A stretch of 63,843 nt of DNA, counting the filler, from Reticulomyxa filosa (Eukaryota > Protista > Foraminifera): assembly GCA_000512085.1 (NCBI GenBank). It is 23 parts of 23 records of this genome, joined end to end, with 100 filler letters (N's around TTAATTAATTAA, not from the genome) between each part and the next. Parts side by side here need not be neighbours in the genome. Positions count along the whole stretch, not along the records: positions 46,599 to 55,475 come from ASPP01000828.1; 22 more parts are not named here. The stretch is one strand, 5' to 3'. The notes below the pieces were generated by a model. The model did no database searches. It had not been told where the DNA came from and saw nothing but the letters and a program-made list of their open reading frames with translations. The first letter of the stretch is position 1, and each line of letters begins with the position of its first letter. Positions 46,599 through 55,475 of this stretch are shown here, in pieces. The position numbers and the translations under genes were made by a program.

Positions 46599-47509
46599 TT
46601 ATTGTTCGATGTTCATAATCAAATATGCTTTCATAATCTTTCCATGTTCCATTCGATAACATACATGCTCTTCTTGGAATAAGATGTCTTGTCTTATATC
46701 TATTTAAAATGATTTGTTATCATTTATATTTGTTTTATTAAAACAACAAAATAGTGCATACATTGCTTGATTGATAATCACTTCTTGATAATAATCCCAT
46801 AGATGTAATGATTGAATATTATCATATTGATAATACCAATTATCATCATTTCTTTTTTTAAATCCGATATATTGTAACTCTTTTTCCATACTTATTAATA
46901 CTTTCTCAAAATCTGCACCTAGTGTACAACATTTTTGAAATAAATAGTTGCATAAAGCTTGTTTGTGAATTTGACGATATTTGATATGTTTAGGATATTT
47001 CAAAATGTTCCATAAAATATGCAAACACATTCCTCTCAATATTTTTAATTCATTTTCTTTCAACCTATCATATATTATATATTATATTTATATTCGTTAA
47101 GTTTATTGTAGACTTTATTGCATTTAACTCATTTAAGTTGGAAGTTGCGCAAATCTCTTTTAATTTCTGTCTTGTATCAACATAAATTTGATTGCAATTT
47201 TTCCATGTTTGTGATATTATTGTTTTTCCGAGCTTATCGCCAAATATTTTGAATAAACGCATTAAATAATATTGTTGTTTTAAGTTTGTGCTGTATTAAA
47301 ATATACAAAGCAATGGTTTGTTAAAAATATATTGAAATATTTTTGTTAGTAAAAAAAAGAGAAAAGAAACCACATAAAATTGATTGTTACGTGTTCTCTG
47401 TTAGCCATGTTAAGATATCTTTTTCAGCATCTCGATCAAACCATTTCAATACATCTGAAATGATCTCTTCACTCGTCTCGGGAAACGTATGTTGAGGTTG
47501 TGCAAGCAT
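46599..47509 (-). CDS. CUE-like + PUB domain protein, spliced, 3' partial
   Basis: TFPETSEEIISDVLKWFDRD (CUE-like FP motif) and LHILWNILKYPKHIKYRQI..LQYIGF (PUB signature). Confidence 0.65.
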
Positions 47510-48760
47510 GATGAAGTTGACTGCAGAAAAAAACCCTTTTTTTGTTTGAATGTTCAAAAAAAATTGATTGACGAGCAAGAAGGCTATGGTTTTGAAAAGA
47601 GAAAAATTTGACAATGTCAAGATTTTTGTTCTATAGATACCATATTGTGTAAACATTCTATAGCAATTAATAAAAAGTCGTCATGCAGAGGTTGTCAATT
47701 AATTCATTGAATCCTTTCAAATGCAGTGCAAGCTGTGAAGTTCCTGCAACATAAAATGTGATGTTTCTGGACTTGTAGCATCAAGAAGCAAACGATTCGG
47801 AACGACAAAGTTTTTTTTGGAGATAGAAAATCTATCAAGGATTTTTTTGTGAGGATAAAAAATTTGGTTTTGGATTTTGTAAGAGATTTTACAATTTCTC
47901 AGAAATATTACTTTTCTCATTCGTAAGTAGTTTCTTTTTTGATGATATTTTATTTGCAAATTTGGATTTATTTTGAAGAAACAATAAAATGGGTTTATTC
48001 TAAATAAATTTATATTTGTTTGTAACTTGAAGCAGCAATTAAAGATAAAATAAAAAACACATCGTTTTTGCAAAAACTTATTTAAATAGAAATTTCTGCC
48101 TAGAAGTGCTTAGAAGGTGTTGAAACGAGAAAACGTGTATGTTCACTTTAAATCCAAAAAAGAAAAAAACCAAAAAGAAAATTTTTTTACAGACGGCGCG
48201 CCTAATTTTAAGTTTTCCGATTTTTCCTTTTTTGGCTTATTTTTTAGTTTTTTTTTAATGTTAAGAAAATATTTTTTTGATTACTGGAGAACAAAATGGA
48301 GCAGGTTGTATGTTTTTTAATTTTTCGTTGCTATTGGTGATTATTTGGTTAAGAGACGGAATAAGAAGTGCAAGCTTTTTTTTTATTTGGCTTTTGCTTA
48401 TAATTTTTAAACTTTTATTAATGGTCAGATTATTGGCAAAGAAAAAAATTGAGAATTTTAAAATAAATAAGCAAAAAATAATGTTGTAGAAAATAAAAAT
48501 GTTTGCAATTGACAAAAAATTGTAGAAAAAAATGACATCATTTGAAACACTTGAAGATTCGTAGATATTTTAAAAAAGATTTTTGAGTTTATTTTTTTGA
48601 GAAAAAAACTTCATTGCTAGTGAAGAAGCAAAATACTGTAAATTGAAGTGTCGTATTAGATGATGAAAAAATGTTTTGAAGTGATTGTCAAAAAAACTTT
48701 TGAACAACATTTGTAGAGAGTAAAGAATTTAAACAACTAAGCGTTTACAATTAAACAATT

Positions 48761-51700
48761 TTACTCATGAGCTTCACTCAGTTCTTTCACTTTTTGTTTT
48801 GCTTTTAATGTTTTTGTATTCCATTCTCCTAGAATTACATCGAACACTTCCCATGCTTCTTCATAATATTTCCTCGCTTTTTTAATTTCTCCAATTGAAT
48901 TCAATGTATTTCCCAAATCCCAACACCAGCCACCAATTGAAATATTTACACTTTTGGATATTGTTCTTTTTATTTGTATCGCTTTTTCGTAATATTTAAT
49001 ACATTCACTATGACTTCCTTTATTATTATAAGCAAACCCTAAGGAATTGTATGAACTGACAACATCATCGTGATTTATTCCAAAGATATGCAATCTAATG
49101 TTTAAAGCTTTTTCATGATATGTAATTGTTTTATCATAGAGTCCTTTCCTATTACATGTATCTCCCAAATCAGAATATGAATCGGCAACAGTTTCCTCAT
49201 TAGGTCCAAATATCTCTAATCGAATCTCCAATGCCTTTTCAAAAGATGTAAATGCTTTATCAAATTGTTTTTTAGCCCTATAAAAATACCCTAATTGAGT
49301 ATAGCATTCGGCAACACTATCATGACTGGCTCCAAAATTTTTCAATCGAATCTTCAATGCCTCTTCATAATATTCGATTGCTTTGTCAAATTCTCTTGCG
49401 TTTCGACAAGTAATTCCTAAATTGATATATACATTGGCAACACTCTTATGATCGCTTCCTAATGTACTTTTTTTAACATGCAATTCTTTTTCAAAATATT
49501 CCTTTGATTTAGTGTAATTGCCGCTATTACCGTAAACACAACCTAAACCACAGTAAGAATTGGCAATAGAAAGATGGTCTGTTCCAGCAATATCTAATCT
49601 TATTTTTATCGATATATTATATTGTTCGATGGCGTTGTCATATTGTTGAGCGCGCATATAGCAATCAGCTAAATTAGCATGTGCTGTGGCGACACGGAGA
49701 TTATTGTTACCAAATATATCTAACCTCATTTGTAATGCCTTTTTATAATATTCAATTGCTTTATTACTTTCTCCTTTTTTTTCATAAGCATTTCCTAAAC
49801 CAAAGTATGCATCGGTGATATGTACATTTTTGTCTCCGAAAATACTTACATTAATTTCAATCACTTTTTCAAAGTACTTAATTGCTGTGTCGCAGTGCTG
49901 TTTATCAACATAAACTTGTGCCAAATTGTTATACAAATTAGCAACGACAACAGTTTTGAATCCAAATATATCTAAATAGGTTTCTAATGCCTTTTCATAA
50001 TAGGCGATTGCTTTGTTGTACGCTCTTTTATTATGGCAAGCTTCCCCTAGATTGTTGAATACATCAGCTATAGCTTTCTGACTGGCTCTACAATTATGTA
50101 ATCGAATTTTTACAACCTTTTCGTAATATTCAATGGCTTTGTTAAAACGCTCTGCATTGCTGTATGCATTTCCTAGTGCGGAGTACCAATCGATGATATC
50201 AGAGGGATTATCTCCAAACAATTTCAATTTACTGTTCAAGCTTTTTTCATAATATTCAATCGATTTGTCATGTTGTTCTATTTTCGAATAAAACAGTCCT
50301 AAATTGTAGTGCAAAATGATAACATAGCTGCTGTCGATTGTAACATTGTCTAGCATAATTTTTAAAGATTTTTCATAGTATAAAATTGCTTGTTGATAAT
50401 CTTTTTTTTCATAATGAACATCTCCAATCATATCATACGATCTAGCTACAAAAGGATGATCAAAACCAAATGTATTAAGCGAAAGTTGTAAATATTGTTC
50501 TAATTGAAGAATGGAGTCATCTAAAAGATTATTGTTCATCAGCTCTTTCCCTTTATCTTCAAGATCTTGCAATTGTATTGAAATATCATGATTCATTTTA
50601 GTATCCCATTGAATGGGTAAAATAGACTGTCTCAATTGTCGATCAATAGTTGCATCTTTTGTAACGAATAACTGTGATGTAATTTTGATGTTTTGTTGAC
50701 ATTTTATTTCACAATTCACAACATACATATTTCCGTCAATATTTATATCATTCAATATTATTATTGACTTTCTTTCTATTACGTATACACCATATACTTT
50801 ATATAGAATTTTATTTTTATTATTGAAAAATTTCGATAATGGAAAAATGAAACTATTGAGTTTAATTAAATTCGGAAATATTATATTTTCCCATTCAGAT
50901 GTATTTTTGACCACAATAACCAATCCTTGTTTATCTGCTTTAATCATTTTCTCAATTATTTTTGCTGCTTCCGCATTTGCTCGTATCCAATTGCTATCCC
51001 AATATCTTTGAAATCCCAGTGGCTCTATTACCACCATTCCTTTTTTATTATCGTTACCATATAACTGTGGAGACAAATAAATATCAGAATAAGTAGCCGA
51101 AATATTCTTTTTAAATTTTCCATCAAAAATTGTGTTTGCCACATGTTTCACAATAACATTCAAACTTTTATTTATATCTTTTTCGATCATTTGACAAAAG
51201 ATCTCTGCGAAATTACTTCGTTTTCTGTTCTCAAATTGTAAACCACCAGTCATTGATTTCAATGGAATGTTTGCAAAAATAGTGAAAATATCTTTGCTAT
51301 TTTTATACCAAAAGTCAGCTGCCATATCTTCATTTCCTTTTTCTTCATCACTGTATGTAATGTTTATAAATATTTTTGGTTTCTTTGCAAAATAATCAGT
51401 TTGTTTTACAAACACGTCTTGAATCTCTTTGAAGCATTTGCTTTTATTGTCACCCGTGATCAAAGTGTTATCTTGATTATTTCCATATCCACACCATACA
51501 AATATCAATCCATCAAAGATTTGTTTTTTATCATTGGAATTATCGACCAAATTCAACCAACGTTTCGAAATGAAGTTGTTCAATTTACTCAAAGAAAGCG
51601 ACTGTGTGACTGGATATTGTGGATTATAAGTACTAAATACTTGATAACCAAATTTAGTTTGAAACAGATTTTGTAACAAAATTAGATCTTGTTGGGCATA

Positions 51701-52816
51701 TTTCAGATATGGTTGCTGTTTATATTTCATTGATCCGGCTAATAACACCAATGGAGATTCTAGTTTATATATCCTCTTTTTATTTTTTGTATGACTTTCC
51801 ACTTCTTCTTTTTCAATTGTGTCGATCCAATCTAATACTTTGGTCTTTACATGTATTGATGTCACCTCACAATTTCCATCTTCTCCTCCCAAAATGTGGA
51901 TGTGTGTCTTGTCGTCATTCAATATTCCAATGCAATCATTCAATGGCATGGGCAATGTGCGTCCAAATTTTGTCCATTTATTTTCATCCATTGAATATTG
52001 ATATACCGCTTTTGAAACAATTGACTTGAAGCCAATGCAATCATTCCATCCACCAAAAAACAAAATAGAATTATAGGTTTGTATATACGCATATCGATAA
52101 AAAGGTAATAAATCACCAAAAACAGATAATTTTTGAAATCTGAATTTGTTTTTATTTTCGTCGTATTCGATCAATAATCCTGTCGCTTTACAAAATAACA
52201 TCAGCTCATACTCTGCTGCTATTTGATCTCTTTTTTTAGGTACAAAGCAATGATACCATATATAATCATCAGTTGGTAAAATACTGTGGTTGACATATTG
52301 AAATGTCTTCAAATTAAACACATCAATATTCTTTGGAGGATATGTAATAATTAATAAATGATTATGTTTTCCGGTAATTATTGTACGTATGCCATGATAA
52401 TTATCTTTTTCTCTTCCAATGAAAACCGGACGGTCGTTCTTATTAACAAAAGGCATCCATTTATTAAAATCTTCAATATTTTTTATTTTAATATTTTTAT
52501 CCCAAACGCTAGTATATTTCATTACCAGCGTATGCTTTTTTTTATTTTCTCCTTGTCCACCGAAAGACAATAACGTGATATAATTTGAATTTTTGTTATC
52601 TTTTATGAGTTCTATCACATTGTGGCCAATCAGTGTAACATTCTTTGGATATGAACAAATAAATTTGTACTGGTTTTTGAGTACATGATAAGAATAACAA
52701 TTCATTTGTTTCCATCCCCCCCAAATAAGGATTTCTTGTTTGTAAAGTACACATTGAGAACGAGTAAGCGGGAAAGGCAAATGAGATAATGTTTCAAAGG
52801 GAGAGAGTGTGTCCAT
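48761..52816 (-). CDS. Kelch-like beta-propeller + inactive caspase-like (C14) domain + about 14 TPR repeats of 42 aa; intronless, about 1351 aa
   Basis: GG-containing Kelch blades (52816-51830); caspase fold PLVLL..Y..L..AQQD..L..LF..FGYQV..DGLIFVWCGYG..KPKIFI (51760-51074); repeats A..Y..LG..Y....YDKAI.YYEKAL.I (50530-48800). Confidence 0.85.
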   Translation of the reverse strand: MDTLSPFETLSHLPFPLTRSQCVLYKQEILIWGGWKQMNCYSYHVLKNQYKFICSYPKNVTLIGHNVIELIKDNKNSNYITLLSFGGQGENKKKHTLVMKYTSVWDKNIKIKNIEDFNKWMPFVNKNDRPVFIGREKDNYHGIRTIITGKHNHLLIITYPPKNIDVFNLKTFQYVNHSILPTDDYIWYHCFVPKKRDQIAAEYELMLFCKATGLLIEYDENKNKFRFQKLSVFGDLLPFYRYAYIQTYNSILFFGGWNDCIGFKSIVSKAVYQYSMDENKWTKFGRTLPMPLNDCIGILNDDKTHIHILGGEDGNCEVTSIHVKTKVLDWIDTIEKEEVESHTKNKKRIYKLESPLVLLAGSMKYKQQPYLKYAQQDLILLQNLFQTKFGYQVFSTYNPQYPVTQSLSLSKLNNFISKRWLNLVDNSNDKKQIFDGLIFVWCGYGNNQDNTLITGDNKSKCFKEIQDVFVKQTDYFAKKPKIFINITYSDEEKGNEDMAADFWYKNSKDIFTIFANIPLKSMTGGLQFENRKRSNFAEIFCQMIEKDINKSLNVIVKHVANTIFDGKFKKNISATYSDIYLSPQLYGNDNKKGMVVIEPLGFQRYWDSNWIRANAEAAKIIEKMIKADKQGLVIVVKNTSEWENIIFPNLIKLNSFIFPLSKFFNNKNKILYKVYGVYVIERKSIIILNDINIDGNMYVVNCEIKCQQNIKITSQLFVTKDATIDRQLRQSILPIQWDTKMNHDISIQLQDLEDKGKELMNNNLLDDSILQLEQYLQLSLNTFGFDHPFVARSYDMIGDVHYEKKDYQQAILYYEKSLKIMLDNVTIDSSYVIILHYNLGLFYSKIEQHDKSIEYYEKSLNSKLKLFGDNPSDIIDWYSALGNAYSNAERFNKAIEYYEKVVKIRLHNCRASQKAIADVFNNLGEACHNKRAYNKAIAYYEKALETYLDIFGFKTVVVANLYNNLAQVYVDKQHCDTAIKYFEKVIEINVSIFGDKNVHITDAYFGLGNAYEKKGESNKAIEYYKKALQMRLDIFGNNNLRVATAHANLADCYMRAQQYDNAIEQYNISIKIRLDIAGTDHLSIANSYCGLGCVYGNSGNYTKSKEYFEKELHVKKSTLGSDHKSVANVYINLGITCRNAREFDKAIEYYEEALKIRLKNFGASHDSVAECYTQLGYFYRAKKQFDKAFTSFEKALEIRLEIFGPNEETVADSYSDLGDTCNRKGLYDKTITYHEKALNIRLHIFGINHDDVVSSYNSLGFAYNNKGSHSECIKYYEKAIQIKRTISKSVNISIGGWCWDLGNTLNSIGEIKKARKYYEEAWEVFDVILGEWNTKTLKAKQKVKELSEAHE

Positions 52817-52875
52817 ATCTTTATTATTTGATAATTTATTGAAATGTAGACAAATAATGTGAATGTTGAAAATTA

Positions 52876-53070
52876 TTTTTGGGGGGACCAAGTTTTGGGA
52901 TATTCGATCAAACAAAAAAGAATTGTATTTAATCAAGGGAAATGAGCAAGGAGAAAAGAGAATTAAGCCTATTAAATTTATACCATTAGAAAATAAAAAC
53001 ATAATGACATTGGCCGTTCTATTAATCTATATTATGATTCATTGAATGGTCTTATTCATATTTGGGGTGA
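52876..53070 (+). pseudogene. WD40-protein C-terminal relic
   Basis: KFWDIRSNKKELYLIKG..IKFIPL..(frameshift)NLYYDSLNGLIHIWG*, same terminus type as 60800-60981. Confidence 0.7.
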
Positions 53071-53363
53071 CTGATTGATCCTTTTAAGTGAATTTGATAA
53101 GAAATTTTTTTCTGGCTACTAATCATTTTAAGTAATTTTCATAAAAATAACTTGCTATTTCTATGGAGATAATGTTAAACAAATAGATTTGCAATGATAC
53201 TGTTTGCATAATAATACTTAACATATACGTATTTAAAGCTTTCTAATTTGTATAGATGATGAATTTTCAAAAGCTGAGCACACAACAATTACGTAATTAC
53301 AGAGCTAATGCATTTAACAAGAATAAAAAATGAATTTTATTTACACAATAAAAACAAAAAGTA

Positions 53364-55475
53364 TCAAAATTTTCCACCACGTTGTTTCACAAGCAATTTT
53401 TGTTGATCTTCCAAACCCTTTACGTTCTTCCAAATACTGTCTTTCATTGATAAACCAATTTGAACACCTACTTTCCAAATATAACCTACAACACTAGTCT
53501 CAGTTACATCAACAATTTTACCATTATTACTGCTCCATAATCTCATTGTCTTATCCATTGAGCATGATACTAGTTTTGAACCATCAGGTGATAAGTGAAT
53601 ACAATTAATATGTTTGTCATGTCCTTCTAATATTTGAACTTGTTTTCCTGAATATGCATCCCATATTCGAATGGTTTTGTCATCTGAATATGAAATAATT
53701 TTCAAGCCATCTGATGAAAATTTTATTCCTCGTACACCACTGGAATGTCCTTCTAGTACTTGAATTTGTTTTCCAGTCAATACATTCCACAATTTAATTG
53801 TACCATCTTTTGAACAAGCTGCAATTGTAGTATCATCTGGAGAAAATTGTACTTCAGTTACATCTTTATATTCAAATAAAAAAAGTTGTCTTCCAGATGA
53901 TATATCCCATACTCGAATTGTCGCGTCCCATGAATATGATACAAATTTAGAACCATCTGATGAAAGTTGAATCCCATCTACAAAATTTTTATGTCCTTCA
54001 AATATCTGAATTTGTTTACTGGATAATGTCTCCCACAATCTAATTGTATTATCCCATGAACAAGATATAATTTTATTTCCATCAGGCAAAAACTTTGCTT
54101 CAATTACATCGGCAGAATGTCCTTCCAATAATCCAATTTGTTTTCCTGAGGATATATCCCATATTCGAATTGTTCTATCATGTGAACATGACACAAGTTT
54201 GGAGCCATCTGGTGAAAATCGTACTTTATAAATCCATCTTGAATGCCCTTTCAATAAGTGGAGTTGTTTTCCTGATAATACATCCCATATTCGGATTGTT
54301 TTATCATCTGAATATGATACAACTTTAGAACCATCTGGTAAAAATAATATTCCATTTATTTCATCGGAATGGCCTTCAAATATTTGAAGCTGTCTTCCTG
54401 ATTGTACATCCCACAATTGTGCTGTTTTATTTTCAGAACCTGATACAATCTTAGAGCCATCAGGGGAAAATTCTAATGTTTTTGTAACACCTGGATATTC
54501 TTCTGTTAACTGAATTTTTCTTTCTAAAGATATATCCCATATTCGAATAGTACTATCATCTGAACATGACAAAATTTTGGACTCCTTTGGAAAAAATTTC
54601 ACAGTAGTTATTTCGCCTGAATGTCCTTCTAATACTTGAATTTGTTTTCCAGATGATACATCCCATAGTCGAATTGTATTGTTTAAACCGGATACAATTT
54701 TGGAACCATCAAATGAAATGCTTGCTGTATTTACAGAATTTGGTTCTTCTAGAACTTGTAGTTGTTTTCCAGACAACAAATCCCATATCCGAATTGTTTT
54801 ATCATTTGAATATGATACAATTTTTGAATCATCTGATGATACTTGAATTCCTCTTATATCATCTGTATGTCCTTCCAATAATTGAAGTTGTTGACCTGAC
54901 AGTGCATCCCATATTCGAATAGTTTTGTCATATGAGAATGATATAATTTTTGATTTATTGGATATGAATTGCACTTCAGCTATCTCACGTGTATGTCCTT
55001 CCAATAATAAAAGTTGTGTTCCAGATAATACATCCCATATTCGAATGGATTTATCATATGAACATGAAACGATTTTAGAGTCATTTGATGAAAATTTCAC
55101 TTTTGTTATCCAATTTGAATGCCCAGTTAATAATTGAATTTGTTTTCCAGACAGTACATCCCATATTCGAATAGTGTTGTCCCATGAACAAGATACAATC
55201 TTAGAATTATCTGATGAAAATTCTGCTGATTCCACAACCCATGAATGTCCTTCCAACAGTTGAGTTTGTTGACCTGATAAAACATCCCATATTCGAGCCG
55301 TTTTATCCGATGAACATGATACAATTTTGGAACCATCGTATGAAAGTTGAACTGTGTTTATTACAGCTGAATGTCCTTCTAGTACGTGAAGTTGTTTTCT
55401 TGATGATATATCCCATATTCGAATAGTGTTATCATTTGAATAAGATACTATTTTTGTTCCATCTGGTGTAAATTG
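53364..55475 (-). CDS. Highly regular WD40 repeat region (at least 15 repeats of about 42 aa) with STAND-WD40-type C-terminal cap; 5' partial, probable NLR-like protein
   Basis: Consensus LEGHSxxIxxVxFSPDGSKIVSCSxDKTIRIWDVLSGKQ; ends GLSMKDSIWKNVKGLEDQQKLLVKQRGG; frame open from contig edge. Confidence 0.88.
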   Translation of the reverse strand, partial: QFTPDGTKIVSYSNDNTIRIWDISSRKQLHVLEGHSAVINTVQLSYDGSKIVSCSSDKTARIWDVLSGQQTQLLEGHSWVVESAEFSSDNSKIVSCSWDNTIRIWDVLSGKQIQLLTGHSNWITKVKFSSNDSKIVSCSYDKSIRIWDVLSGTQLLLLEGHTREIAEVQFISNKSKIISFSYDKTIRIWDALSGQQLQLLEGHTDDIRGIQVSSDDSKIVSYSNDKTIRIWDLLSGKQLQVLEEPNSVNTASISFDGSKIVSGLNNTIRLWDVSSGKQIQVLEGHSGEITTVKFFPKESKILSCSDDSTIRIWDISLERKIQLTEEYPGVTKTLEFSPDGSKIVSGSENKTAQLWDVQSGRQLQIFEGHSDEINGILFLPDGSKVVSYSDDKTIRIWDVLSGKQLHLLKGHSRWIYKVRFSPDGSKLVSCSHDRTIRIWDISSGKQIGLLEGHSADVIEAKFLPDGNKIISCSWDNTIRLWETLSSKQIQIFEGHKNFVDGIQLSSDGSKFVSYSWDATIRVWDISSGRQLFLFEYKDVTEVQFSPDDTTIAACSKDGTIKLWNVLTGKQIQVLEGHSSGVRGIKFSSDGLKIISYSDDKTIRIWDAYSGKQVQILEGHDKHINCIHLSPDGSKLVSCSMDKTMRLWSSNNGKIVDVTETSVVGYIWKVGVQIGLSMKDSIWKNVKGLEDQQKLLVKQRGGKF

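What the first reader, a model, noticed from the sequence alone, without database searches (positions are those of the whole stretch)
48761..52816. Kelch-pseudocaspase-TPR protein with both catalytic residues replaced by Tyr
Seen: a caspase fold between a Kelch propeller and about 14 TPRs. The SHG position reads GYG (TAT, 51485-51487) and QACRG reads ITYSD (TAC, 51353-51355), yet the 4-kb ORF is intact. Known: caspase/CHAT-TPR fusions occur in bacterial conflict systems, and dead caspases such as c-FLIP act as scaffolds or regulators. Inference: an undescribed two-sensor receptor that signals through a non-proteolytic caspase dimerisation module. An unassigned beta-rich segment (about 51050-50540) links caspase and TPRs.
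Basis: partly seen in the sequence, partly recalled or inferred. Interest (0 to 1): 0.85.

Follow-up and report, generated by a model that had tools for sequence, protein, structure and literature searches.

The report
Dead caspase in foraminiferal Kelch-TPR protein
An intact gene of the foraminifer Reticulomyxa filosa joins a Kelch propeller, a caspase-fold domain that has lost both catalytic residues, a small unassigned beta-rich module and 13-14 TPR repeats; it belongs to a large species-specific family in which most caspase domains look catalytically dead, so it is a new variant of the known pseudo-caspase theme and its function is untested.

Summary
The gene is RFI_00774 of the foraminifer Reticulomyxa filosa, on the minus strand at 48761-52816 (1351 aa, no stop). 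It has four parts:
- a six-bladed Kelch propeller (AF2 pLDDT 87.5; Foldseek E 1e-14 to KLHDC10 and LZTR1);
- a caspase-fold domain (CED-3 Z 16.3; all top 50 Foldseek hits are caspases);
- a 160-aa beta-rich module with no known relative;
- 13 in-register 42-aa TPR units.

Tyr444 (TAT, 51485-51487) lies in the column where intact relatives read GHG. Tyr488 (TAC, 51353-51355) lies in their ACRG column and on Cys163 of caspase-3.

The gene is under purifying selection. dN/dS against its 85%-identical paralog is 0.30-0.48, and 20-39 stops would be expected under neutrality.

Tyr/Tyr is not a fixed signature. In the clade of 48 caspase-TPR paralogs the two columns vary (His column Y26/H17; Cys column Y26/C8/W4) while the flanking core is almost invariant. 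Relatives with an intact dyad exist in R. filosa, in Bolivina and in metagenomes, fused to Kelch, WD40, ankyrin or NACHT.

This is a eukaryotic effector-repeat family, not a bacterial conflict system. Caspase-like proteins of R. filosa were already reported. My reading is a non-catalytic scaffold or regulator, comparable to c-FLIP. That function is inferred; expression and binding are untested.

The parts
48761..52816 (-). Coding sequence of RFI_00774 (1351 aa from the ATG at 52816; stop codon 48761-48763). The open frame continues upstream to 53002, but that stretch is probably not coding.
   Evidence: ORF list. 100% match to P0001. The paralog starts at the same Met. Locus homology covers 48750-52872 at 85.5% nucleotide identity.
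51821..52816 (-). Six-bladed Kelch beta-propeller (aa 1-332), followed by a helix (aa 333-352) leading into the next domain.
   Evidence: AF2 pLDDT 87.5. Foldseek: KLHDC10 E 1.5e-14, LZTR1, KLHDC2, KEAP1. The PDB profile search hits Kelch proteins only, E 1e-9. 43-44% identity to P0095 and P0117, which pass the Pfam Kelch thresholds.
51059..51790 (-). Caspase-fold (C14-like) domain without a catalytic dyad (aa 343-586).
   Evidence: Foldseek top 50 all caspases. VIA-align CED-3 Z 16.3 over model residues 5-246. Profile against PDB hits only caspases, E 0.009. Paralogs P0004, P0009 and P0019 pass Pfam PF00656.
51485..51487 (-). TAT, Tyr444, at the catalytic His position (local context CGYG).
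   Evidence: The column reads GHG in 26 H/C-intact relatives.
51353..51355 (-). TAC, Tyr488, at the catalytic Cys position (local context ITYSD).
   Evidence: The column reads ACRG in intact relatives and aligns to Cys163 of caspase-3.
50540..51022 (-). Unassigned module (aa 599-759): one helix, then short beta strands. In many R. filosa proteins it occurs without the caspase domain, directly before TPRs.
   Evidence: DSSP of the AF2 model. Hits to profile positions 255-432 only in many proteins. 54-sequence alignment A4. No PDB or Atlas relative.
48821..50458 (-). Thirteen kinesin-light-chain-type TPR units of exactly 42 aa (aa 787-1332). A partial unit lies before them and a capping helix after (48764-48820).
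   Evidence: Register print-out. Pfam TPR_12 E 1.4e-105 with 10 stretches.

Best explanation
RFI_00774 is a functional, non-proteolytic member of a foraminifer-specific family of 'effector domain plus repeat array' proteins.

Shown:
- The architecture is Kelch propeller, caspase fold, beta-rich module, then 13-14 TPRs.
- Both dyad positions are Tyr.
- The gene is under purifying selection.
- It sits in a clade of about 48 R. filosa caspase-TPR paralogs. In that clade the structural core of the caspase fold is almost invariant, while the two catalytic columns have drifted away from His/Cys many times.
- Dyad-intact relatives carry the same caspase domain in front of WD40, ankyrin, NACHT or behind Kelch.

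Inferred:
- The caspase fold is kept as a protein-interaction or assembly module, not as an enzyme.
- The TPR array is the variable binding or autoinhibitory part. It evolves fastest.
- The conserved Kelch propeller docks the protein to a partner shared with the active Kelch-caspases of the same genome.
- The protein would therefore act as a scaffold or regulator of those active caspases, in the way c-FLIP(L) regulates caspase-8.

Both Tyr codons are one GC-to-AT transition away from His and Cys codons. In this roughly 30% GC gene, mutation bias alone can explain why Tyr is the commonest replacement.
For: Identity and family: 19 R. filosa paralogs; 373 representatives at E<=1e-3; 10 of 10 further clade members checked are R. 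filosa.

Folds: caspase; Kelch.

Dyad.

Constraint:
- dN/dS is 0.30 (Kelch), 0.31 (caspase-like), 0.30 (beta module) and 0.48 (TPR) at dS 0.32.
- 20-39 new stops would be expected under neutrality, giving P(no stop) <= 3e-9.
- The same four-part architecture is found on two independent contigs.

Relaxed dyad with a conserved core: column entropies are 1.49 and 2.23 bits at the dyad, against 0-0.5 bits for the flanking DGLIFVWCG.

Tree: the clade of 48 has support 99 and is nested among H/C-intact sequences. The His column changed at least 13 times and the Cys column at least 9 times.

Active partners with the same N-terminal domain: Kelch-caspases P0160, P0168 and others, with GHG and ACRG intact. 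They match the family HMM at 65-74 bits.

Architectures of intact relatives: caspase+WD40, caspase+NACHT, caspase+ankyrin, and Kelch+caspase in Bolivina.

Precedents: c-FLIP(L) R315/Y360 (PMC7586951); pseudo-orthocaspases with Tyr/Ser (PMC6426788).
Against: - There is no expression evidence; no RNA run could be listed.
- There is no binding evidence. The homodimer prediction returned 'no answer'.
- The caspase-domain AF2 model is only moderate (pLDDT 67.8).
- The comparison paralog RFI_20013 carries a 1-nt frameshift in a T5 run. If that is real, part of the divergence is neutral; this would make the dN/dS values overestimates for this gene rather than underestimates.
- The Kelch-caspases form a separate clade from the caspase-TPR clade. 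A direct partnership is therefore a guess resting on the shared Kelch domain.
- Four clade members keep His and Cys, so some members of the family may still be proteases.
Confidence: 0.6

Rival explanations
1. One reading: a two-sensor receptor in which both the Kelch propeller and the TPR array sense ligands, and the dead caspase domain transmits the signal by dimerising.
For: Two repeat-type binding domains flank a caspase fold. Caspase folds normally pair through their last strand (established knowledge of caspases). c-FLIP(L) is a close structural match.
Against: The Kelch domain is one conserved module. It has 23 invariant and about 60 nearly invariant columns across 47 paralogs at 44-52% identity. 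It is reused in at least 155 proteins in front of WD40, active caspase, TPR or nothing. That fits a common docking domain better than a variable sensor. Most caspase-TPR paralogs have no Kelch at all. Dimerisation is untested (no answer).
Confidence: 0.2
2. A gene on its way to decay: a redundant copy in a hugely expanded family, with a caspase domain that has simply stopped mattering and no specific function.
For: The family is very large and the assembly holds many partial or broken models. The sister copy has a frameshift. The dyad columns drift. No RNA evidence is available.
Against: A 1351-codon frame is intact in roughly 30% GC DNA where 20-39 stops would be expected since the duplication. 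dN/dS is 0.30-0.48 in every domain, including the caspase-like one. The core strand motifs are nearly invariant across 48 paralogs.
Confidence: 0.1
3. A cytoskeletal or transport adaptor: the kinesin-light-chain-type TPR array binds cargo or motors in this organism's very active microtubule system, and the caspase fold and Kelch are only structural spacers unrelated to cell-death signalling.
For: The TPRs are of the TPR_12 (kinesin light chain) type. Kelch propellers often bind cytoskeletal proteins (general knowledge).
Against: TPR_12 arrays are also the usual repeat part of NLR-like expansions. Intact relatives couple the same caspase domain to NACHT, WD40 and ankyrin, the typical make-up of cell-death or immune-type proteins. 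No motor-binding heptad region was detected by Pfam.
Confidence: 0.1
4. Still a protease, using other residues. An example would be the nearly invariant Cys two positions before the His column (WCG), serving in place of the canonical dyad.
For: That Cys is present in 45 of 48 clade members and the preceding Trp in 48 of 48. Both are absent from the intact outgroups.
Against: That position lies inside the core beta strand rather than at the strand end where the nucleophile sits in caspases (model DSSP, plus general knowledge of the fold). No compensating His is conserved. The canonical Cys column tolerates Tyr, Trp, Asn, Ser, Thr, Glu and Phe.
Confidence: 0.05

Closest known systems
c-FLIP(L), the vertebrate pseudo-caspase
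   Same: A caspase fold that has lost the dyad, with Tyr at the Cys position (R315/Y360 in human; PMC7586951). Its protease-like domain (3h13_A) matches the model at Z 14.9. Active paralogs exist in the same genome.
   Different: c-FLIP has two death-effector domains and nothing after the caspase-like domain. This protein has a Kelch propeller in front and a beta-rich module plus 13-14 TPRs behind. It has Tyr, not Arg, at the His position. It arose independently in a unicellular rhizarian. Heterodimerisation is not shown here.
Caspase-like proteins of Reticulomyxa filosa (Klim et al. 2018, PMC5982838), used as outgroup for animal caspases (PMC10959488, PMC11251625)
   Same: Same organism and same branch of the C14 family. 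The model is structurally nearer to animal caspases than to paracaspases or metacaspases. The Kelch-caspase proteins annotated 'caspase-8' and 'caspase-3' share the N-terminal Kelch module.
   Different: Those proteins keep GHG and ACRG. This gene and most of its 48-member clade do not, and they carry the beta-rich module plus a TPR array instead of ending after the caspase domain.
Bacterial pseudo-orthocaspases (PMC6426788)
   Same: C14-fold proteins in which the His of the dyad is replaced by Tyr and the Cys is also lost, and which are retained under selection.
   Different: They are prokaryotic, have Ser at the Cys position, lack the Kelch and TPR parts, and belong to a different branch of C14. 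Metacaspase-type structures score lower (Z 10-12) than caspases (Z 15-16).
NLR/STAND-type effector-NOD-repeat proteins and bacterial CHAT-TPR proteins
   Same: An effector-type domain of the caspase clan joined to a long TPR, WD40 or ankyrin array. The family is large and lineage-specific. A metagenomic relative has caspase followed by NACHT (P0129).
   Different: No NACHT, NB-ARC or other NTPase domain is present in this protein. The 160-aa beta-rich module stands where the NOD would be. CHAT is a poorer structural match (Z 10.5). The organism is a eukaryote.

Membership tests
Peptidase C14 (caspase family, clan CD) | Caspase-hemoglobinase alpha/beta fold with large- and small-subunit parts | tested here: met
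   Foldseek top 50 all caspases, E down to 4.6e-7. VIA-align: CED-3 Z 16.3, rmsd 3.0 over 176 residues; model range 3-246.
Peptidase C14 (caspase family, clan CD) | Sequence match to Pfam PF00656 above the gathering score | tested here: inconclusive
   The query has no hit. The 75%-identical paralog scores 20.8 against a cut-off of 21.4. Paralogs P0004, P0009 and P0019 pass with 32-39 bits. The family profile hits only caspases in PDB, E 0.009.
Peptidase C14 (caspase family, clan CD) | Catalytic His-Cys dyad | tested here: not met
   Tyr444 and Tyr488 occupy the columns that read GHG and ACRG in 26 intact relatives. Tyr488 aligns to Cys163 of caspase-3.
c-FLIP-type pseudo-caspase | Caspase fold without the dyad, retained under selection | tested here: met
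   dN/dS is 0.31 in this domain.
c-FLIP-type pseudo-caspase | Death-effector domains, and heterodimer formation with an active initiator caspase | tested here: not met
   No DED was found by Pfam; the N-terminal domain is a Kelch propeller. Pairing could not be assessed (no answer).
Kelch beta-propeller | Six four-stranded blades with Kelch-type sequence motifs | tested here: met
   AF2 pLDDT 87.5 with about 24 strands. Foldseek hits to Kelch propellers, E 1e-14 to 1e-9. The profile hits Kelch proteins only. The Pfam Kelch hits of the query itself are below threshold.
TPR_12 (kinesin-light-chain-type) repeat array | Tandem 42-aa helix-turn-helix units matching PF13424 | tested here: met
   E 1.4e-105 with 10 stretches. 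13 units in exact 42-aa register.
NLR / STAND ATPase | Central NACHT or NB-ARC NTPase domain | tested here: not met
   There is no such Pfam hit in the protein. The module between caspase and TPR has no PDB sequence relative. Only a metagenomic relative (P0129) has NACHT.
Bacterial CHAT/caspase-TPR conflict systems | Bacterial origin and a CHAT-type protease domain | tested here: not met
   All close relatives are Reticulomyxa filosa. CHAT scores Z 10.5 against 15-16 for caspases.

The most novel reading that the evidence does not exclude
Foraminifera evolved, independently of animals, a caspase-based regulated signalling system. In it, active Kelch-caspases are controlled by dozens of dead-caspase-TPR receptors that lack a NOD domain. 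These receptors recruit or block the active enzymes through caspase-caspase pairing, as a protist counterpart of the FLIP/caspase-8 switch. RFI_00774 would be the form that shares the Kelch docking domain with the enzymes it controls.
Probability: 0.15. Interest if true: 0.75.

Novelty: new variant of a known kind. Interest (0 to 1): 0.5.

Why it matters
Caspases proper were long taken as an animal invention. Reticulomyxa is the one protist reported to have close relatives of them (PMC5982838). This analysis shows that its genome holds active-looking Kelch-caspases and also a family of about 48 caspase-TPR genes, most of which have lost the dyad while keeping the fold under selection. That gives a second, independent case of pseudo-caspases retained beside active ones. 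It could be used to test whether regulation by dead paralogs is a general property of caspase systems. It also bears on whether effector-repeat architectures of the immune or cell-death type exist in Rhizaria. The practical limits are that nothing is known of expression or partners, and that the organism is hard to manipulate.

Tried and rejected
- Single-sequence phmmer of the middle region against PDB found nothing. The profile was needed.
- No RNA run could be listed for the gene.
- Complex prediction on two copies of the caspase-like domain gave 'no answer' with score 0.00. This is neither support nor evidence against pairing.
- The beta-rich module has no PDB sequence relative; the best hits are E 0.5, a pilin and a left-handed beta-helix acetyltransferase. 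It has no usable Atlas feature hit. The Atlas and VIA shape searches of the two-domain model were filled by caspases.
- I tested whether the short N-terminal region of Kelch-less paralogs is related to the linker of the Kelch-caspases. BLASTP gave E 2.9 and Pfam found nothing, so the idea was dropped.
- A first local hmmsearch missed the active Kelch-caspases because of HMMER's filters. With --max they score 65-74 bits.
- Literature searches for Kelch, WD40 or TPR expansions in Reticulomyxa and for foraminiferal pseudo-caspases found nothing relevant. The genome paper itself could not be found in the library.
- Small ORFs at 46704-48515 gave only a sub-threshold PUB-domain hint.
Full report
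**What is there**

The piece (46599-55475) has about 29% G+C. It carries one long minus-strand frame, 48761..53002. It is identical to the GenBank model RFI_00774, a 'hypothetical protein' of the foraminifer Reticulomyxa filosa, and the 8877-bp contig equals this piece. The deposited model adds 15 residues from a small upstream exon.

The real start is most likely the ATG at 52816, for two reasons:
- The 75%-identical paralog RFI_20013 (P0002) starts at exactly that Met.
- Nucleotide homology between the two loci (85.5% over 4.1 kb) runs only from 52872 to 48750.

From that start the protein has 1351 residues. Residue numbers below count from it.

**Domains**

| Residues | Window | Domain | Main evidence |
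|---|---|---|---|
| 1-332 | 51821-52816 | Six-bladed Kelch propeller | AF2 pLDDT 87.5, Foldseek E 1.5e-14 |
| 343-586 | 51059-51790 | Caspase fold, no dyad | CED-3 Z 16.3 |
| 599-759 | 50540-51022 | Beta-rich module, unassigned | no PDB or Atlas relative |
| 787-1332 | 48821-50458 | 13 TPR units of 42 aa | TPR_12 E 1.4e-105 |

Kelch propeller:
- Pfam alone gives only sub-threshold Kelch hits.
- A 47-sequence alignment of the domain (A3) hits only Kelch proteins in PDB, with E 1e-9.
- The AF2 model is confident (pLDDT 87.5, pTM 0.87, about 24 strands).
- Foldseek returns KLHDC10, LZTR1, KLHDC2/3, NS1-BP and KEAP1 at E 1e-14 to 1e-9.

Caspase fold:
- The AF2 model built from the 19-paralog alignment A2 is moderate (pLDDT 67.8). 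It has the canonical strand-helix order of the fold.
- All of the top 50 Foldseek PDB hits are caspases.
- The exhaustive VIA-align search ranks CED-3 (Z 16.3), Dronc, caspase-9, caspase-8 and the c-FLIP(L) protease-like domain (14.9). These stand above MALT1 (12.7), metacaspases (10-12), legumain (11) and CHAT (10.5).
- The family profile finds only caspases in PDB, E 0.009.
- Three paralogs pass Pfam's Peptidase_C14 threshold. The closest paralog just misses it at 20.8 against 21.4.

Beta-rich module: the model shows a helix followed by many short strands. No sequence or shape relative was found.

TPR array: 13 TPR_12 units stand in exact 42-residue register, with a partial unit before and a capping helix after.

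**The catalytic positions**

A full scan of 1.8 billion representatives with the A2 profile gave 373 relatives at E<=1e-3.

I aligned the 79 relatives that cover the caspase part to the family HMM. In 26 of them the two columns read GHG and ACRG. These include RFI_25175, RFI_05058 and RFI_05622 of R. filosa, one protein of the foraminifer Bolivina argentea, and metagenomic proteins. The profile-to-caspase-3 alignment places the second Tyr on Cys163 of QACRG. The assignment of both positions is therefore secure.

**Tyr/Tyr is not a conserved signature**

The other dyad states among those 79 are Y/Y 16, H/Y 13, Y/C 4, and a scatter of N, G, R, W, S, T, E and F.

On a maximum-likelihood tree of 76 caspase domains, the caspase-TPR proteins form one clade of 48 (support 99). 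The tree was rooted on the active Kelch-caspases, and the clade is nested among intact sequences. Within the clade the His column changed at least 13 times and the Cys column at least 9 times. This gene pairs with RFI_20013 (support 100); the next relative reads N/Y.

Column statistics in the clade:
- The core strand DGLIFVWCG has 0-0.5 bits of entropy, and its Trp is invariant.
- The His column has 1.49 bits (Y26, H17, N3, G1, R1).
- The Cys column has 2.23 bits (Y26, C8, W4, N3, S2 and others).
- The domain median is 2.08 bits.

This is the usual picture of a pseudo-enzyme: the fold is kept and the chemistry is released. His to Tyr and Cys to Tyr are each a single GC-to-AT transition. In a gene with 31% GC (25% at third positions), mutation bias can explain why Tyr dominates.

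**Selection**

Against RFI_20013 (Nei-Gojobori), dS is 0.32. dN/dS by domain:

| Domain | dN/dS |
|---|---|
| Kelch | 0.30 |
| Caspase-like | 0.31 |
| Beta-rich module | 0.30 |
| TPR | 0.48 |

Six percent of all single-base changes in this gene would create a stop. At the observed neutral divergence, 20-39 new stops would be expected, giving P(no stop) <= 3e-9. The gene has none.

RFI_20013 has a one-base frameshift in a T5 run, which the annotators bridged with a 40-nt 'intron'. It could be a sequencing error or a real lesion. If it is real, the dN/dS values overestimate the rate in this gene.

No RNA run could be listed, so expression is untested.

**Context in the genome**

- The Kelch module is shared by at least 155 R. 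filosa proteins at 42-52% identity. It stands alone, or in front of WD40 arrays, TPR arrays, or caspase domains annotated 'caspase-8' and 'caspase-3' that keep GHG and ACRG. Those domains match the family HMM at 65-74 bits.
- The beta-rich module also occurs without a caspase domain, after Kelch or after other N-terminal parts.
- Only this gene and RFI_20013 showed all four parts among the proteins sampled.
- Dyad-intact relatives outside the clade show caspase+WD40, caspase+NACHT and caspase+ankyrin. Bolivina has Kelch+caspase.
- All clade members whose source I looked up are R. filosa.
- The upstream neighbour (53364-55475, cut by the edge) is a WD40 array of 42-aa units. The paralogous locus also has a WD40 gene upstream.

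**Interpretation**

Shown: an intact, constrained gene for a Kelch / dead-caspase / beta-module / TPR protein in a species-specific modular family.

Inferred: the caspase fold serves as an interaction or assembly module. The TPR array, which evolves fastest, is the variable binding part. The conserved Kelch propeller is a docking domain shared with the active Kelch-caspases. On this reading the protein acts as a scaffold or regulator of those enzymes, as c-FLIP(L) does for caspase-8. In c-FLIP(L) the dyad reads Arg315/Tyr360 (PMC7586951). Bacterial pseudo-orthocaspases with Tyr/Ser are a second precedent (PMC6426788).

I give this reading 0.6. The single complex prediction gave no answer and is not used as evidence.

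**Comparison and novelty**

Caspase-like proteins of Reticulomyxa that group with animal caspases are in the literature (PMC5982838) and are used as outgroups (PMC10959488, PMC11251625). UniProt labels several clade members 'Peptidase C14 caspase domain-containing'. I found no description of three things in the searched library:
- the large dead-dyad caspase-TPR subfamily;
- the beta-rich module;
- the four-part Kelch form.

It is not a bacterial conflict system and not an NLR, since no NTPase domain is present. It is not a c-FLIP orthologue either: it has no DEDs and arose independently. I rate it a new variant of a known kind, with moderate interest (0.5). The function rests on inference, and the Tyr/Tyr pair is less special than it looked.

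Noticed in passing
window 53364-55475 (minus strand), cut by the piece's edge: The upstream neighbour is a WD40 array of at least 14 repeats in 42-aa units. The units share a mean of 49% identity with each other (maximum 67%). The frame stays open to the edge of the piece. The paralogous locus L001 also has a WD40-like gene upstream (L001:1177-2384), which matches this one at 65-77% nucleotide identity in many registers.
   Followed up: partly
L001:3007-7057 (RFI_20013), near codon 505: The closest paralog has a one-base frameshift in a run of five T. The deposited model bridges it with a 40-nt 'intron', deleting 13 residues of the caspase-like domain. It could be a homopolymer sequencing error or a real lesion.
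   Followed up: partly
window 52817-53002 and the annotated upstream exon of RFI_00774: The deposited 1428-aa model adds 77 residues before the Met at 52816, 15 of them from a separate small exon. The paralog and the end of locus homology at 52872 indicate that these residues are not coding.
   Followed up: yes
R. filosa proteins P0157-P0273: The same roughly 350-aa Kelch propeller opens at least 155 proteins of this genome. It is followed by nothing, by WD40 arrays, by TPR arrays or by dyad-intact caspase domains. This is a very large modular expansion. Bolivina argentea also has a Kelch+caspase protein (P0154).
   Followed up: partly
metagenomic relatives P0129, P0101, P0113: Dyad-intact relatives of this caspase domain from unnamed metagenome contigs are fused to NACHT (P0129), WD40 (P0101) or ankyrin repeats (P0113). 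These are NLR-like architectures built on a caspase of the foraminiferal type.
   Followed up: no
window 50540-51022; alignment A4: The 160-aa beta-rich module is a free-standing unit that precedes TPR arrays in dozens of R. filosa proteins, with or without a caspase domain. Its Gly-x-x-Tyr (in IDGNVY) and an N-terminal Trp are invariant. No relative was found in PDB or the Atlas, and its fold was not searched on its own.
   Followed up: partly
caspase-TPR clade, strand before the His column (window about 51488-51514): A Trp-Cys pair (VWCG) is invariant (Trp) or nearly invariant (Cys) in the 48-member clade. It is absent from the dyad-intact outgroups, which read FS, LL or YS there. It is a clade-specific constraint of unknown meaning.
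   Followed up: no
window 46704-47063 (minus strand): A 119-codon ORF downstream of the gene gives a weak, sub-threshold PUB-domain match (E 0.006, 17 bits against a cut-off of 34). The rest of 46599-48760 has only short ORFs and no recognisable gene.
   Followed up: partly
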